A stretch of DNA of 63,483 nucleotides, the filler included, from Reticulomyxa filosa (taxonomy: Eukaryota > Protista > Foraminifera), in the NCBI GenBank assembly GCA_000512085.1. It is 24 parts of 24 records of this genome, joined end to end, with 100 filler letters (N's around TTAATTAATTAA, not from the genome) between each part and the next. Parts side by side here need not be neighbours in the genome. Positions count along the whole stretch, not along the records: positions 1 to 6,334 come from ASPP01020569.1; 23 more parts are not named here. The stretch is one strand, 5' to 3'. The position numbers and the translations under genes are program-made. The notes under the pieces were generated by a model. It did no database searches and was not told the origin of the DNA. It saw only the letters and a program-made list of their open reading frames with translations. This document shows, piece after piece, positions 2,109-10,286 of this stretch; the first letter of the stretch is position 1, and the number at the start of each line of letters is the position of its first letter.

Positions 2109-2966
2109 ATGCACCCAGCCGAAAATGTAACATATAGCGAAAACGAAAAAGTGTTGTTATTGCCCGATGGTAAGAGTCTGTGGGGACAGGGTTTTGTAAA
2201 AAACGTATTGGAAGATAATACCTACCGCGTGAGTTTCACCACGTTCATATCTGGCGAATTCAGGGAGCACATAGTGGACGTATCAGTAGGGGCAATAATG
2301 AAGCCACCTTCATTGAAAAAAAGTAAGGAGGACCTAACGAAGCCATTGTTGCACATACTTTTCAACGGTAGTGACGAGACCCGTTTGGAAGAGATATTTG
2401 AAGCGTTGAGCACAACCTTGCTTGGCAAATATTTAGACGTACTGCGAAGCTATGATGGAAAGAACTACTTTGAACACAATATGTGCGAAAATACTGCCAA
2501 TATGATAGCCTTACAAATCTTGCCGTTTGTAAGCATGCCAACATACATATGGAAAGTGCCATGTTTGTTTTGTTGGCAACCGATCAAAAGCGTACACGCA
2601 AGGCAAAGTGTGTTGCTTGTAAGGTTTACCCGCCAATGGGTATTCGAACGAATCCGATCTTATCGTCATGAATTGTTGTATGACACTTCATGGCACGGTA
2701 AAATGGCTTGCGTGTTATGCTTTCGGTTTGTGTGCGACAATGAATTGGTTGTTTCTTGCAGTTTGCGACGACACGGGTTATGTTTTGAATGTTACCATGG
2801 CATTGTCTGTTATTTTACTTCTATCAACACTTTGTTGCACTCTTTGCTCAGCCAATGGCTGAATAAAGATTGCATTGTTTCTATTGTCACTTTTGTTGCA
2901 GGAGATATCAGACTTCTTAAAAATGTTTCCAATTGTATTCCTTGGACTGAAACTTTTGCTACATGA
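2109..2966 (+). CDS. Hypothetical protein: N-terminal Tudor/SH3-like barrel, C-terminal Cys/His Zn-finger
   Basis: 285-aa intronless ATG ORF. N-terminal pattern EKVLLL..LWGQGFVKNVLEDNTYRVSF. Cys motifs CLFC, CVLC, CSLRRHGLCFEC. Confidence 0.6.
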   Translation: MHPAENVTYSENEKVLLLPDGKSLWGQGFVKNVLEDNTYRVSFTTFISGEFREHIVDVSVGAIMKPPSLKKSKEDLTKPLLHILFNGSDETRLEEIFEALSTTLLGKYLDVLRSYDGKNYFEHNMCENTANMIALQILPFVSMPTYIWKVPCLFCWQPIKSVHARQSVLLVRFTRQWVFERIRSYRHELLYDTSWHGKMACVLCFRFVCDNELVVSCSLRRHGLCFECYHGIVCYFTSINTLLHSLLSQWLNKDCIVSIVTFVAGDIRLLKNVSNCIPWTETFAT

Positions 2967-3184: not shown

Positions 3185-4918
3185 ATGACTTGGGAGAAAA
3201 ATAGAAATGTGAAACAAAAAGAGTCAAAACGGAAAAAAAAAATAACAATATTAAACGAATTTTCCACCTTTGAAAGAAGATACGATGAAACAAAAGAGCA
3301 GCTAGAAGCAATCGAAGCATTGGACAAGAAATGGACACACATTTGTCAACATAAATATGACAACATGCGCAAAGTGTACGAAAAAGGTAATGCAATAATT
3401 GAATTGCTAAGAATTGAATGTAAGAGAGTGTGTAAAAACGGCTGTAAATGCAGTTTCAAAAGTATATATGGAGCAGTTCTTGGCGGGAGTGTACAAAAAA
3501 CAGTGTCAATTACGGAAAATATGGAGTCGGATTTGATATTCCTTTATAAATTGAGACGAAAGACTTTAATAAAAGAGAATTTGCCCAGCATTGAAAAACA
3601 GCAACAAGATATGATGCAATGGATCAAGGATTGTTTGGTAAGACGACATCAACAAGTGGGAAGGGAAAAACAGAGTAAGCCCGAATTTGGAGTCCATTCG
3701 TCTTCAAACAATAATTTACGTATTACTACAGAGGATATATCCTTCGACGTATTGGTGACATTTACGTATGACGTCCGACAGTATTGCATGTTTGATTATA
3801 AGACAAAATTTTGCACTGTGTATCCATTCACGCGTGAGGAGCTGCACATTGCTGCGCAGGATCTGTTGGAGTGCAGCGACGTATATCAACAAGATATTGC
3901 GACAATGGAGCAAGAAGCTCCAGAGTTTATACAATTTCTGAGCCAAAATATGAGTACCTCTTTTTCTCTATTAAGTGCGTATTACACGCAAGAGGCTTTG
4001 CTTGGAAACAATACGCGCAACGCCATTTTGTTTTTGAAGAAATGGAAGTATGAAGAGACAAAAGAGGGACTCGGAACTTTATGGCCAATGTCAAAGATCT
4101 TGGAACTGCTTTGTGTTAATGCTTACCACTCGCTTCAGCGCGAAAAATTTTCCCCCCTTTTATCCATTCGCATTGTTAAACGCGTTTTTGAAATGCTATC
4201 ATGGCTTGGAGAACATATTCACTCCGAACATGTCATCGTTATCTCGTGGCCATTGCTTCAATGTAGTCACCCGCTCCTAGTCCGCTGCACTAAAGGAGTC
4301 CAAAAAATGATTGCCCAAAACATATTTGGAGCCTGCGATGTTGTCGTACTGGACAATGTTGTTCTGAGTTACGCATACTCTACGGATTTTTATTATTATT
4401 ATTTTCTTTAAAAAAACGAAGGCAATTTTTTCCAAAAAAAAAAAAAAAAAGAAAATTTGGAGAACTTTGGCAAGTGGAAAGATTTAGCATGTGTTTGTGA
4501 AGCTGCATTAATTGATTTTCCACTTGGGAGAGTGAGTGAATTCATTGAAACCTGTACCAAGACATTGAAAGATCCGAGAGCCCCACAGAAAGAAAAAGAG
4601 AGCTCGTCTGAAAAGGAGTACGTATCTGTCAAAAAAATCATTGAGCACTGCTTTACAAGAGTGACTGAAGCCAACGTTGTGACAATTACCAACATATGGA
4701 AGAGCATACAGCGTACGTACAACTTACCAAATAAATACTTTTTCACACAAGGTGTCATTTCGAGAGAACTGTATGAACTGTGGAAGAGTAACTGTGTGCA
4801 AAAGTGTGATAATGATGGGAAAGATGGCAATGGCTTTAATCTAAATACTAACTTTCGTTGGGTTGGAACACCCAGTCATGCCATGCAGTCCATTATTAAT
4901 CGATACACCACAACTTAA
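3185..4918 (+). CDS. 2'-5'-oligoadenylate synthetase (OAS)/cGAS-like nucleotidyltransferase with C-terminal Z-alpha-like winged helix; exons 3185-4367 and 4452-4918 (549 aa)
   Basis: Motifs collinear with OAS1: VLGGSVQK..MESDLIF, SFDVL, NAILFLKKWK, PMSKILELLCVNAY, VISW, VVVLD..KNL, KWKDLA. GT-AG intron 4368-4451 keeps frame. Confidence 0.8.
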
Positions 4919-5365: not shown

Positions 5366-6292
5366 TCAATGTAGCTGAGTAATGCCAAAGAGAATGGCAG
5401 CACAACCAATGGCAAGCTGTGTCAAGACAATGGAATAACCGACATGTGGAGACCATTCAATTTTTGGACTTTTATTGAAAAAATCGATGACTTGTCGATC
5501 CAAGCCATTGGAACTTTGGAGCGGATGGATCGATTTTTTATTGCTATTGCTCTCCGTGATCGCAAGGAATACATTGTTCTTCGGGTTTGGATATACGTGT
5601 TCATATGGACGTTCGGATCTCCATTTTTGTATATTTTCCTGTGTTTGTGTTTGTGTTTGCGTTGTTGTTGCTTGCATTGTCTCGGGTGATACTTTTGGAG
5701 ACAAATCAGGCTGTCCTGGAGACCGGTGCACTTGAAAGGGATGAGTTTTTTTTTGGGAGGGGTCACTATGCTCATTCGAATTTGAACTTTTATTTTGTGC
5801 TTGATCCTGGATCGTTTCATGCCCATGTGAATTCACATCTTTTTTGTTGTCAGCAACAGGACGAACAGGTTTATGAGTTAAATGGGCATTGATATTTGTG
5901 TGTGTCATATTCAAACGACTGCTATCATCCAATCCATTGCTTTCACGAAATGCCTTTGTTTAATTTGTTTATCGAAAATGAAAGTATGACTTTGTATACA
6001 GACAACCAATCATTCACACTATTAACTTGCATTTTGGCATTTAATCTCGCTTTCCACTTTTCATAGTCCAAGTTATTTTGGCGACGAATTTTTTGTTCGA
6101 ACGTTTCCATATGCGTTTGATAGGCGTCCTCTTCATCCGACCGCTTTGCAAAGAAGAGATCGAAATACTTTTCCTGTTGCGTTTTCGCTCGGTCCGTAAA
6201 GCTTACGCCAACCCCAGCCTGTTGTTTATATTGGCGGAACTCCTCTTGGTCCTTCCATCCCGTTCCATAGCTTCCACTTGCCACAGTTTCGT
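5366..6292 (-). CDS. Hypothetical protein, 3' part (5' end missing), with C-terminal hydrophobic anchor; 37-nt intron 5954-5990
   Basis: ORFs 5943..6311 and 5366..5932 join in phase 0 (YK|AFRESNG). The protein ends in VGYSIVLTQLAIGCAAILFGI. Confidence 0.5.
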
Positions 6293-7411: not shown

Positions 7412-8822
7412 GTATATATGTATATGTGCATATATGTTATATAAAACGCAACGGTAATGCTTGTATGTATTATATGCCGAATGAACCGCAATCGATGAAT
7501 TCAACCAGTGGAAGCCGCTTTGTGCAGGAAAAGCTGTGTGAGACAAAGTACTTTGAAATGTTCTTCGATGAGCTGAAAGAGCAAGTGGCGGAACTGATGA
7601 TGGACAACTTTGGACATTACGCGGTGGAGGCGCTGTTCAATCACTGCAACGACGAGGAGCGCACCATTTTGATGGCCAATTTGCGTGACGACATGGATAC
7701 AGTGGCGTGTCACAAGCAAGGCTCTTTCAGCATCCAGGCCATGATGGACACGGTATCGACGAGCGAACAAAAGCAATATCTGATCCAAGGTCTGCAAAAA
7801 GACATTAAAAAATCATCTTGAACCACTCTGGACATTACGTCATTCTAAGGTTTTTGACCAAGTTTACATACCCTGAAACCAAATTCATTTACAAAGCCAT
7901 CATTCAATACTCGTTGGAATTGGCCACTGACCACTATGGATTGCGAGTACTCAAAGATGTTGTCGAGCAAGTTTTGTAAGGGGTTTTTTTTTTTACTAAA
8001 CATTACAAGTATACATATAATATAATAATAATAATATATATATATATATACATATTATTATTATATTATATGTATACTTGTAATGTTTGTTACAAAATAT
8101 ATACCATTTACGAAATGATGAAAGAGTCAAACACAAGTCCCATCCCAGGAATTGCTGGCAGTGTTTATGTCAATTGTAAAGCACACGAATCCATTGGTGG
8201 AAAACCAGTACGGGAATTATATAGTCCAACATTTGTTGGATGTGGCTCCTCGCGAAGTGACAGACATAATCAAAGAGAAGATGCACGGTAAGTTTGTAAG
8301 ATACAGTAAACAGAAATTTTCTTCGAATGTTGTCGAAAAGTGTTTGAGACATTCCGATCTGGAGATGAAAGCAGGCGTTGCAAACAAAGATTGGCGGCGT
8401 ATTATCATCAAAGAATTGTTAAATAAAGTCGGTGATTTAATTAGTGACAAATATGCCAATTACTGTCTGCAAACTGCATTACAAACTGCCTCCTCTGATC
8501 CACTCCTTTTGTCCGAATTTTATCAAACCACCAAACCTCATTTGGAAAACTTGGTTAGCATTTCAACATATACATATACACATATATATATTTTTTTATC
8601 ATTTTCTATACATTTTTGTGTATACGTATGCACGTTGTACTCTTGCAACGTGCGCTGCATGTTCATTCTTTTCGATCTTTTTTTTTTTTTTTTTTTGGAT
8701 ATGGTAAGAGAGAAAATGTAAAGGCCAAATGGATAAAACTGATTGACGCGGCATGTTGTAAACATAAAATGGTATGTCCAATGTCAATTTCAATGAATTT
8801 TCGATGCAAATGGAAGAGATGA
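6435..8822 (+). CDS. Pumilio/PUF RNA-binding protein (5' partial, multi-exon, apparent frameshift at A-run 7807-7812)
   Basis: PUF repeats KTQSGSRFVQ (across intron 7262-7508), DNFGHYAVE, HKQGSFSIQ, NHSGHYVIL, DHYGLRVLK, NQYGNYIVQ, QKFSSNVVE, DKYANYCLQ. Poly-Asn N-terminal region. Confidence 0.9.
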
Positions 8823-10286
8823 TGGAACCCAGTGGTAGATACTCATATTCCAACCAGCATCAATCTGTGGGGTCGCTACTTACCAAGCATCCAATTGATG
8901 CATCTCGAGTGGCCAAAGCTTAGGCTAAAACCGCCTTTACGCTTATGTTTATACTTAGGCCTGAGCTGATCTCCCGAAATGCTTGTCTTTGTTTTTGATA
9001 CTCGTTACTGTTTATCACATTGTCAAAGAAAAAATAAATCCAAATCAAATGGAACATAATAATAAAAATAAAACACAAGTACATAAAATTTTTTGTAATA
9101 AATAAATAAATAAAAAAAGAAGGAAAATATACAGTCACTAAAAACTCAACTTCAAAGGTTCAGTTTTTCTTTTTCTTTTTTTTTTTTTTTTTAAAAAAAA
9201 ACAAACTTTCTTCCTAAAAATTGTGACTTTGTGCAAATGTTCAATGTTTCAAAAATAAAAACAGCACACTTTTTTTTTTTTGTTTGTCTTTTTATTTTTT
9301 ATCATTTTTTTAAAAATTGGTGCGGAAGAAATTTGTTTGTTTTCAAACTTTATTTTTTCTTTGATACACTTGGTTTGTTTAGAGAGATATAAAACAGCAA
9401 GAAGTGCTGCGTCTTTGAAATCTTGGTTTTTGTATGCTTTGAATGAGATTTTGTGCTTGTCTGTAATGTGCTCAAACATTTTTCAATCACGTAATCTTTC
9501 ATTCCTGTTCCAACTGAATACATCTTTTTTGCAATTATTTTGTTTTTGTTCGAATGTCTTTTTTTTTTTAAGTGCAATCGCGTTTAAGCGTCTAGATAAA
9601 ACAATAAAAACCCAAACCCATTAAACTTTGTATGTTCAATAGCTTTGGCTCTAGTTATCTGGTGATTTGAGGAGATAATCCACTTCTGAAAAAGCTGTTT
9701 CATTTGTTTGAAGAGTTGTTGTACGTCTTTGGAAAGGAAAATCTTGAAACAGTCTTAGAATAATTGTGGCACACAAACTGTTGTTTTCTCAACAAATAAA
9801 AAAAAGATATAAATTTGCAAACAATTATAATTTATAGTATTCATTCAGATTAAGTTTTCAGTTAAAAATAAACACAAAAACAACCACTAAAAATTATATC
9901 TAAAACAAAAATTAATAACCAATCGAATATCAACGCAAGATTTTAAATTAATTACAGTAGTTTATATTAAACGTAGATAGATTGAACAATTAGAGTGATT
10001 GTTTAATTTTTATACAAAAAATCAACAATAAAGTGTGCGAATGCTCAAATGTTTCGCTCTTAAACAAATTTTCAACAAAAGGCGAATAAATTAAAAAAGA
10101 TACAATTCTATTTCCTGCTTTATTTAGATTCTTTTTATTTGCTGAAAGATAATAAGATTCATCCACTCTTTAATTTATTTTAATCCTATGTCGTTTGGAG
10201 GCTACAACGTTGACACTTTAAAAAAAAAGAAAAAAAAGGGAGGCTTACATTGTATTTTTTTAGTTTACTAAATGGTATAACGGAGC

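What the first reader, a model, noticed from the sequence alone, without database searches (positions are those of the whole stretch)
3185..4918. OAS/cGAS-like second-messenger synthase fused to a Z-alpha-like domain: candidate protist Z-nucleic-acid immune sensor
Seen: the ORF track splits this locus in two, but intron 4368-4451 (GT..A-run-AG) joins the parts in frame into 549 aa. The N-terminal part has the pol-beta NTase signature GGS + E-x-D (MESDLIF) + third Asp (FDVL) and the OAS1_C motifs in order. The extra C-terminal domain (~4625-4867) contains QGVISRELYELWKSNCVQK...FRW. This matches the ADAR1/ZBP1 Z-alpha recognition helix KKEINRVLYSLAKKGKLQK...W, with Arg, Tyr and Trp kept, Asn replaced by Ser and a longer wing. 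Established: OAS/cGAS/CD-NTases make nucleotide second messengers on sensing nucleic acid, and Z-alpha binds Z-RNA/Z-DNA. Inference: this is a sensor-synthase that could be gated by Z-form nucleic acid in a rhizarian. I do not know of a described example of this architecture.
Basis: partly seen in the sequence, partly recalled or inferred. Interest (0 to 1): 0.9.

Follow-up and report, generated by a model that had tools for sequence, protein, structure and literature searches.

The report
Foraminiferal OAS-like enzyme with winged helix
This Reticulomyxa filosa gene encodes a divergent relative of the antiviral enzyme OAS that carries a generic winged-helix domain at its end; that domain is shared by dozens of sister genes, and nothing specific supports the proposed Z-DNA/Z-RNA sensor.

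Summary
The window is Reticulomyxa filosa contig C20569 and the gene is RFI_23865, annotated as hypothetical. The two ORFs are real. The 84-nt GT..AG intron (4368-4451) is supported by a phase-1 intron at the same place in at least eight paralogs. No RNA data could be obtained.

The N-terminal part is an OAS-type nucleotidyltransferase:
- a profile of 21 paralogs hits human OAS2 (E 2.2e-4);
- GGS, E114-x-D116 and D188 sit on the expected structural elements.

The gene belongs to a family of at least 58 copies in this genome. Most copies have lost the catalytic acids; this copy is one of about three that keep all of them. Paralogs already appear as OAS-superfamily CD-NTases in the supplement of Culbertson & Levin 2023.

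The C-terminal domain is not an extra of this gene. About 32 genomic copies exist, in both family clades. It folds as a winged helix whose structural neighbours form a flat list (F-93, H1/H5, Fur, ORC4/Cdc6, with Z-alpha merely among them). No Pfam z-alpha signal was found. The supposed Z-alpha Tyr is unique to this copy, the Asn is Ser, and the wing prolines are absent.

Verdict: the OAS-like synthase is supported; the Z-alpha sensor reading is not.

The parts
3185..4367 (+). Exon 1 of RFI_23865 (aa 1-394 plus the first base of codon 395)
   Evidence: ORF; 100% match to G000:C20569; annotated protein P0001.
3185..3298 (+). N-terminal basic helical extension (aa 1-38), outside the OAS-like core
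   Evidence: The model has long helices at residues 2-54 and 57-84. Structural alignments to OAS1 start at model residue 39-40.
3299..4366 (+). OAS-like nucleotidyltransferase core (both lobes), aa 39-394
3482..3490 (+). G100-G101-S102 of the NTase G[GS] motif, with Lys at S+3
   Evidence: Read from the sequence. Aligns with the GGS of OAS2 in the profile alignment. Lies at the end of strand 94-101 of the model.
3524..3532 (+). E114-S115-D116, the first two catalytic acids, 12 residues after Ser102 as in OAS2 domain II
   Evidence: Lies in strand 112-122 of the model.
3746..3748 (+). D188, the third catalytic acid (F-D-V-L)
   Evidence: Lies in strand 185-194 of the model. His or Asn in most paralogs.
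3923..3976 (+). About 18 codons removed as an 'intron' in the annotated model but conserved across paralogs (F-L-x-x-N-M-S motif)
   Evidence: P0001 lacks them. F251, N255, M256 and L263 are nearly invariant in alignment A1.
4016..4129 (+). OAS1_C-type helices (L-K-K-W ... I-L-E-L-L-C)
   Evidence: Second aligned stretch with OAS2 residues 220-279. A280 and W287 are invariant, and L284 and K285 nearly so.
4368..4451 (+). Phase-1 intron, 84 nt, GT..AG, containing the in-frame TAA at 4409-4411 (alternative annotated acceptor at 4421)
   Evidence: Sequence; 21% GC; same position and phase in at least eight paralogs, with the acceptor two bases before N-[LM]-E. Not seen in RNA.
4452..4918 (+). Exon 2 (154 codons plus the TAA stop at 4916-4918)
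   Evidence: ORF; P0001.
4452..4558 (+). Last helix of the OAS-like core (N-L-E-N-F-G-K-W-K-D-L...), conserved in the second exon of paralogs
   Evidence: tblastn and ORF listing of paralog second exons.
4559..4627 (+). Charged, low-complexity linker
   Evidence: Residues 1-14 of the domain model have low pLDDT. Not aligned among paralogs.
4628..4915 (+). Family-wide C-terminal winged-helix domain (a1-b1-a2-a3-b2-long wing-b3-a4)
4748..4786 (+).
   Evidence: Helix 55-67 of the model. Net charge about +1, and the Tyr column varies among the 27 paralogous domains.
4859..4861 (+). Invariant Trp of strand b3 (wing)
   Evidence: One of two invariant columns in A3, with the Cys of the I-E-H-C-F motif.

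Best explanation
RFI_23865 is a two-exon gene of the foraminifer Reticulomyxa filosa. It encodes a roughly 549-aa, highly divergent member of the OAS superfamily of cGAS/DncV-like nucleotidyltransferases. The protein has four parts: a basic N-terminal helix, an OAS1-like two-lobed NTase core with an intact G-S / E-x-D / D active site, a charged linker, and a C-terminal winged-helix domain. It is one copy of a lineage-specific family of at least 58 core copies and about 32 detectable winged-helix copies. In that family the winged helix is the standard C-terminal module, and most members have lost the catalytic acids. Shown here: gene structure by comparison with paralogs, fold, homology to OAS, intact catalytic residues, and the family-wide nature of the winged helix. 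Inferred: the enzyme joins NTPs into a 2'-5'-linked or other oligonucleotide signal when a ligand, most likely a double-stranded nucleic acid, binds the core groove and/or the mostly basic winged helix, as part of cell-autonomous defence. The dead paralogs would then act as non-catalytic binders or regulators, as OASL and NF90/NF45 do in animals. The winged helix is a generic one and not a Z-alpha domain.
Against: No single-sequence hit to Pfam NTP_transf_2, OAS1_C or Mab-21, or to any PDB chain. The profile hit to OAS2 is modest. There is no expression evidence. No product, ligand or downstream receptor is known: a six-frame search for the RNase L KEN domain found nothing, although that search rang in no control genome either. 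Poly(A) polymerase scores only about 2 Z units lower. The query sits on a long branch (1.58), so its exact place in the family is unsure. Nucleic-acid binding by the winged helix is inferred from fold and charge only.
Confidence: 0.7

Rival explanations
1. One reading: the C-terminal domain is a true Z-alpha domain, and Z-DNA/Z-RNA binding gates the OAS-like synthase.
Against: Z-alpha is tied with many unrelated winged helices (F-93 8.6, H1 8.5, Fur, ORC4) and covers less of the domain than ORC4/Cdc6 WHDs do (84-94 residues). Pfam z-alpha is not hit at E<=10 in the exon, at E<=1 in 27 paralogous domains, or at E<=1 in the six-frame genome. The family profile finds no Z-alpha chain in PDB at E<=10. 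The Tyr column is variable and only Trp is invariant across paralogs. The Asn position is Ser, the two wing prolines are absent, the wing carries an insertion absent from all 26 paralogous domains (8 residues longer than in its nearest ones) and helix a3 has net charge about +1. PMC11298590 reports that Z-alpha-like domains lacking N173/Y177 neither bind Z-nucleic acids nor drive the B-to-Z change.
Confidence: 0.04
2. The protein is a template-independent RNA-tailing enzyme (poly(A)/poly(U) polymerase-like) and not a second-messenger synthase. The winged helix would recruit it to RNA or DNA.
Against: All eight best structural matches are OAS family, with higher identity (17-18% against 8-14%). 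The only significant PDB sequence hit of the family profile is OAS2. Paralogs fall in the OAS superfamily in a published phylogeny. No PAP_central, PAP_assoc or RNA-binding domain of PAPs was found.
Confidence: 0.08
3. Despite the intact triad, this copy works like most of its family: a non-catalytic OAS-fold scaffold (as OASL, NF45/NF90, MiD51) that binds nucleic acid or a partner through the core and the winged helix.
For: Most sampled paralogs lack the acids; at least 19 carry the conserved S-G-C / C-x-Y / H replacements. They still keep the fold and the winged helix, so the family's common function does not need catalysis. NF90/NF45 DZF domains are among the top fold matches.
Against: The query keeps GGS, the Lys at S+3, E114, D116 and D188 with OAS-like spacing after long divergence (branch 1.58), which suggests selection for catalysis.
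Confidence: 0.12

Closest known systems
Vertebrate OAS1 (porcine 4rwn/4rwp, human 4ig8), with OAS2, OAS3 domain I and OASL
   Different: Only 14-18% identity. Below the Pfam OAS1_C threshold. Has an extra basic N-terminal helix and a C-terminal winged helix, neither of which I know of in OAS1-3 (from memory); OASL carries ubiquitin-like domains instead. Product and activator are unknown.
Reticulomyxa filosa CD-NTases in the data set of Culbertson & Levin 2023 (PMC10732462)
   Same: EP00480_P025644 and P021013 are the paralogs on contigs C10504 and C15496 found here. They share the G-G-S / D-G-D / D triad and are placed with eukaryotic OAS-superfamily sequences.
   Different: RFI_23865 itself is not among the five R. 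filosa sequences listed. At least two of the gene models used there (P021013, P024262) stop before the winged-helix domain, and the main-text passages I read make no mention of Reticulomyxa or of such a domain.
Z-alpha domains (ADAR1, ZBP1, PKZ, E3L, I73R; Pfam PF02295)
   Different: No profile match. Ser in place of N173, no P192/P193, a wing lengthened by an insertion that no paralog has, and an extra C-terminal helix. The Tyr is not conserved in paralogs.
ORC4 / Cdc6-Orc1 C-terminal winged-helix domains; PadR/MarR/Fur-type and SSV1 F-93 winged helices
   Different: No sequence relationship. Different context: no AAA+ module and not a transcription factor.
NF90/NF45 DZF domains
   Same: An OAS-like fold that has lost catalysis and is joined to nucleic-acid-binding modules, a parallel to the dead majority of this family.
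   Different: DZF proteins heterodimerise and carry dsRBMs rather than a winged helix. The query keeps its catalytic acids.

Membership tests
OAS superfamily of CD-NTases | Pol-beta NTase N-lobe plus OAS1_C-type helical C-lobe | tested here: met
OAS superfamily of CD-NTases | G[GS] motif, [DE]x[DE] on strand 2 and a third acid on a later strand | tested here: met
   G100-G101-S102, E114/D116 and D188 align with the OAS2 motifs and lie on strands 94-101, 112-122 and 185-194.
OAS superfamily of CD-NTases | Significant sequence-profile similarity to OAS proteins | tested here: met
   The family profile A1 against PDB gives human OAS2 9h1z_A as the best hit at E 2.2e-4, with three collinear stretches.
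OAS superfamily of CD-NTases | Pfam OAS1_C (PF10421) at or above the gathering score | tested here: not met
   No hit in the protein at E<=10 and none over the cut-off in the six-frame genome. Only a transitive link exists: the metagenomic relative P0028 scores 19.1 bits against a 19.9-bit cut-off.
OAS superfamily of CD-NTases | Phylogenetic placement inside the OAS clade | tested here: inconclusive
   Not recomputed here. Paralogs from C10504 and C15496 sit with eukaryotic OAS-superfamily sequences in the supplementary trees of PMC10732462. The query is a long-branch member of the same family.
OAS superfamily of CD-NTases | Nucleic-acid-activated synthesis of 2'-5' oligoadenylate or another nucleotide signal | not testable with these tools
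   Needs biochemistry.
Z-alpha (PF02295) | Winged helix-turn-helix fold | tested here: met
Z-alpha (PF02295) | Match to the z-alpha sequence profile | tested here: not met
   No hit at E<=10 in exon 2, at E<=1 in 27 paralogous domains or at E<=1 in the six-frame genome. The family profile finds no Z-alpha chain in PDB at E<=10.
Z-alpha (PF02295) | Z-specific residues N173, Y177, P192, P193 and W195 (as listed in PMC11298590) | tested here: not met
Z-alpha (PF02295) | Z-alpha structures stand out as the nearest structural neighbours | tested here: not met
Z-alpha (PF02295) | Binding of Z-DNA/Z-RNA or B-to-Z conversion | not testable with these tools
   Needs CD and EMSA with the isolated domain.

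The most novel reading that the evidence does not exclude
The C-terminal winged helix, fused to every member of a foraminiferal OAS-like family, is the ligand-sensing module that gates the few catalytically live members, RFI_23865 among them. This would be a sensor architecture not described for OAS or cGAS enzymes. In the extreme version, this copy has convergently acquired a Z-alpha-like Tyr/Trp pair and reads Z-form nucleic acid.
Probability: 0.2. Interest if true: 0.7.

Novelty: new variant of a known kind. Interest (0 to 1): 0.4.

Why it matters
OAS-type enzymes are thought to be the most widespread and possibly the oldest eukaryotic CD-NTases (PMC10732462). Almost nothing is known about what they sense or signal outside animals. 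This foraminifer has expanded a very divergent OAS branch to dozens of copies, fused it to a family-specific winged helix, and inactivated most copies. RFI_23865 is one of about three copies that still look catalytic, which makes it a sensible candidate for biochemical tests of protist OAS signalling. The result also corrects the public gene model and removes a striking but unsupported Z-alpha claim.

Tried and rejected
- Single-sequence searches of both exons against Pfam, NCBIfam and PDB found nothing relevant.
- Word-indexed protein searches found only the gene's own annotated product for exon 1 and nothing for exon 2.
- A single-sequence search of the genome with exon 2 found only itself. 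The paralogous winged helices appeared only with tblastn and profiles.
- No RNA sequencing run was listed.
- The six-frame search for the RNase L KEN domain (PF06479) gave nothing, but it rang in no control genome, so it is uninformative.
- The language-model Atlas search of the winged helix gave only sub-threshold hits (0.76, DUF3849).
- hhalign of the winged-helix profile against the C-terminus of the Tara homolog P0020 found no relationship.
Exons were used by reference, and the annotated P0001 served only as a database record.
- I had no tool-supplied Z-alpha sequence, so no direct profile-profile comparison with Z-alpha was run.
- Stop-codon readthrough or two separate genes were considered and set aside. 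Paralogs have introns of non-multiple-of-three length at the same codon, and four annotated proteins join the core and the winged helix.

Full report
**What the locus is.** The window is contig C20569 of the Reticulomyxa filosa assembly. The exon-1 protein matches one database entry, hypothetical protein RFI_23865 (P0001, 542 aa). ORFs 3185-4411 and 4457-4918 share a frame and are separated by a single TAA at 4409-4411.

**The intron.** The segment 4368-4451 starts with GT, ends with AG, is 84 nt long and is 21% GC, against 39% in the flanking coding sequence. No RNA run was listed, so I tested the intron by comparison with paralogs.
- At least eight paralogs break their reading frame at the same codon, after the conserved D-N-[LIV]-[IV]-[LIV] motif.
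- They share a phase-1 donor (G-T-T-A) and an acceptor two bases before a conserved N-[LM]-E.
- Their intron lengths run from 66 to 86 nt. Several are not multiples of three, so the downstream conserved exon can only be read after splicing.
- The annotated model also cuts out about 18 codons (roughly 3923-3976) that hold a motif nearly invariant in the family.

All searches used the exons by reference.

**The N-terminal part.** Single-sequence searches were blank. The genome, however, holds at least 58 matches to exon 1 at 26-38% identity. The evidence for an OAS relationship is as follows.
- A profile of 21 paralogs (A1) has human OAS2 as its best PDB hit (E 2.2e-4). Three collinear stretches cover the G-G-S / acid-pair region of both OAS2 domains and the OAS1_C-type K-x-W and L-E-L-L helices.
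- An AlphaFold model built on A1 (pLDDT 80.6) matches OAS2 and OAS1 first in Foldseek.
- G100-G101-S102, E114, D116 and D188 lie at the end of strand 1, on strand 2 and on a later strand of the model. The spacing from the Ser to the first acid equals that of OAS2 domain II.

The margin over poly(A) polymerase is only about 2 Z units.

**The family.** Among about 40 informative copies, the full triad survives only in the query and in the copies on C15496 and C10504. Two partial copies may also keep it. At least 19 copies carry a conserved S-G-C / C-x-Y / H replacement and must be catalytically dead. The query is a long-branch singleton between the two main clades.

An exhaustive profile search of 1.84 billion proteins found only 31 proteins at E<=0.001. 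Of the ten I looked up, seven are R. filosa entries. The other three carry no name; two come from ENA metagenome assemblies.
- P0020 lies on 22-23% GC contigs, one a Tara scaffold of 19 kb, with densely packed ORFs.
- P0028 itself nearly reaches the Pfam OAS1_C threshold.

**Prior knowledge.** Culbertson & Levin 2023 report OAS-like proteins in 8 of 12 eukaryotic supergroups. Their supplementary trees and alignments contain five R. filosa sequences, including the C10504 and C15496 paralogs, placed with other eukaryotic OAS-superfamily proteins. RFI_23865 is not among them, but the existence of OAS-like CD-NTases in this organism is not new.

**The C-terminal part.** The first roughly 35 residues of exon 2 are the last helix of the OAS-like core and are conserved in the paralogs' second exons. 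After a charged linker comes a domain of about 95 residues.

This domain is not an extra of this gene. A profile of nine copies finds 32 places in the genome. Many lie on the same contigs as core matches, and those examined sit downstream of the core on the same strand, in both the live and the dead clades. Four annotated proteins contain both the core and the domain motifs. Across 27 copies, only the Cys of an I-E-[HQ]-C-F motif in helix 1 and a Trp in strand b3 are invariant.

An AlphaFold model (pLDDT 84.3) shows a winged helix with a long, less confident wing and an extra C-terminal helix. Its structural neighbours form a flat list of winged helices.
- SSV1 F-93 scores 8.6, linker histones 8.5-7.9, ASFV I73R 8.3, ORC4 8.3-8.0, Fur and MarR about 8, and PKZ Z-alpha 7.9.
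- In Foldseek, the Z-alpha-type entries are ranks 31 and 50.
- In the ESM Atlas, the nearest shapes are ORC4_C and Cdc6 winged helices and PadR, which cover 84-94 residues.
- In the viral library, the nearest are phage wHTH proteins.

**The Z-alpha test.**
- Pfam z-alpha is not hit in exon 2 at E<=10, in any of 27 paralogous domains at E<=1, or in the six-frame genome at E<=1.
- The family profile finds no Z-alpha chain in PDB at E<=10.
- PMC11298590 lists N173, Y177, P192, P193 and W195 as the residues that make a wHTH a Z-binder. It shows that Z-alpha-like domains with Ser and Asn at the first two positions bind no Z-form nucleic acid.
- The Tyr column reads Q, H, R, D, N or E in paralogs, and helix a3 has a net charge of about +1.
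- The one mildly positive sign is 23% identity in the structural alignment to PKZ Z-alpha.

I conclude that the likeness reflects the generic winged-helix pattern plus one chance Tyr. I put the Z-alpha reading at about 4%.

**Mechanism.** I take the protein to be a nucleic-acid-responsive oligonucleotide synthase of the OAS type. The mostly basic winged helix (query pI 9.0) would serve as an added nucleic-acid- or partner-binding module. The dead paralogs would act as non-catalytic binders, as OASL or NF90/NF45 do. Fold, homology, catalytic residues and architecture are shown here. Ligand, product, receptor and immune role are inferred. No effector was identified: the KEN-domain search was blank but uninformative.

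**Verdict.** The locus is a new variant (an OAS-like core plus a family-specific winged helix) of a known kind, of moderate interest.

Noticed in passing
window 3923-3976 and 4368-4451: The public gene model RFI_23865 (542 aa) removes about 18 codons that are conserved across paralogs. It also uses an acceptor (4421) that adds a poly-Lys stretch absent from paralogs. The 549-aa model fits the family better.
   Followed up: yes
L062 (Tara metagenome scaffold, gene at 8001-10028) and L063: The only clear non-Reticulomyxa homolog of the core (P0020, 675 aa, E 3e-32, G-G-S / N-G-D / D) is a single intronless ORF. It lies on 22-23% GC contigs packed with short ORFs that have no Pfam hits. The source could be a giant virus or an AT-rich protist.
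   Followed up: partly
G000 contigs C45437, C45, C12563, C45374, C3789, C4733, C28870, C26476 and others (L002-L004, L007-L009, L011, L012): The largest subfamily of the OAS-like family has replaced the catalytic residues by a strictly conserved S-G-C / C-G-Y / H set. It keeps the fold and the winged helix. This is a conserved pseudo-enzyme clade whose replacement residues look selected.
   Followed up: partly
PMC10732462 supplement (EP00480_P007837, P006249): R. filosa has a second, more canonical-looking OAS-like pair (G-G-S-V-Q-K-G-T, Y-D-x-D-L-V-F) that my searches with RFI_23865 did not bring up. The organism therefore holds at least two OAS-like lineages.
   Followed up: no
window 2109-2966 (+): The upstream 285-aa ORF has a Cys/His-rich C-terminal half that looks like a zinc-finger or RING-type region. 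It has no Pfam hit at E<=0.01.
   Followed up: partly
window 5366-5932 (-): This 188-aa ORF has a sub-threshold Pfam NUFIP1 match (E 0.0012, 19 bits against a 23.3-bit cut-off).
   Followed up: no
window about 880-1000 and 4434-4450: There is a TA-rich microsatellite (reads as I-Y-I-Y repeats in ORFs) and long A runs in intergenic and intron sequence, including A17 just before the acceptor.
   Followed up: no
P0028 (ENA metagenome, 321 aa): This distant relative of the family's C-lobe carries a near-threshold OAS1_C match together with a weak, sub-threshold match to the zf-C2H2_jaz dsRNA-binding zinc-finger family (E 0.011, 16.3 bits against a 22.6-bit cut-off). If real, it would be another way of attaching a nucleic-acid binder to an OAS-like core.
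   Followed up: no
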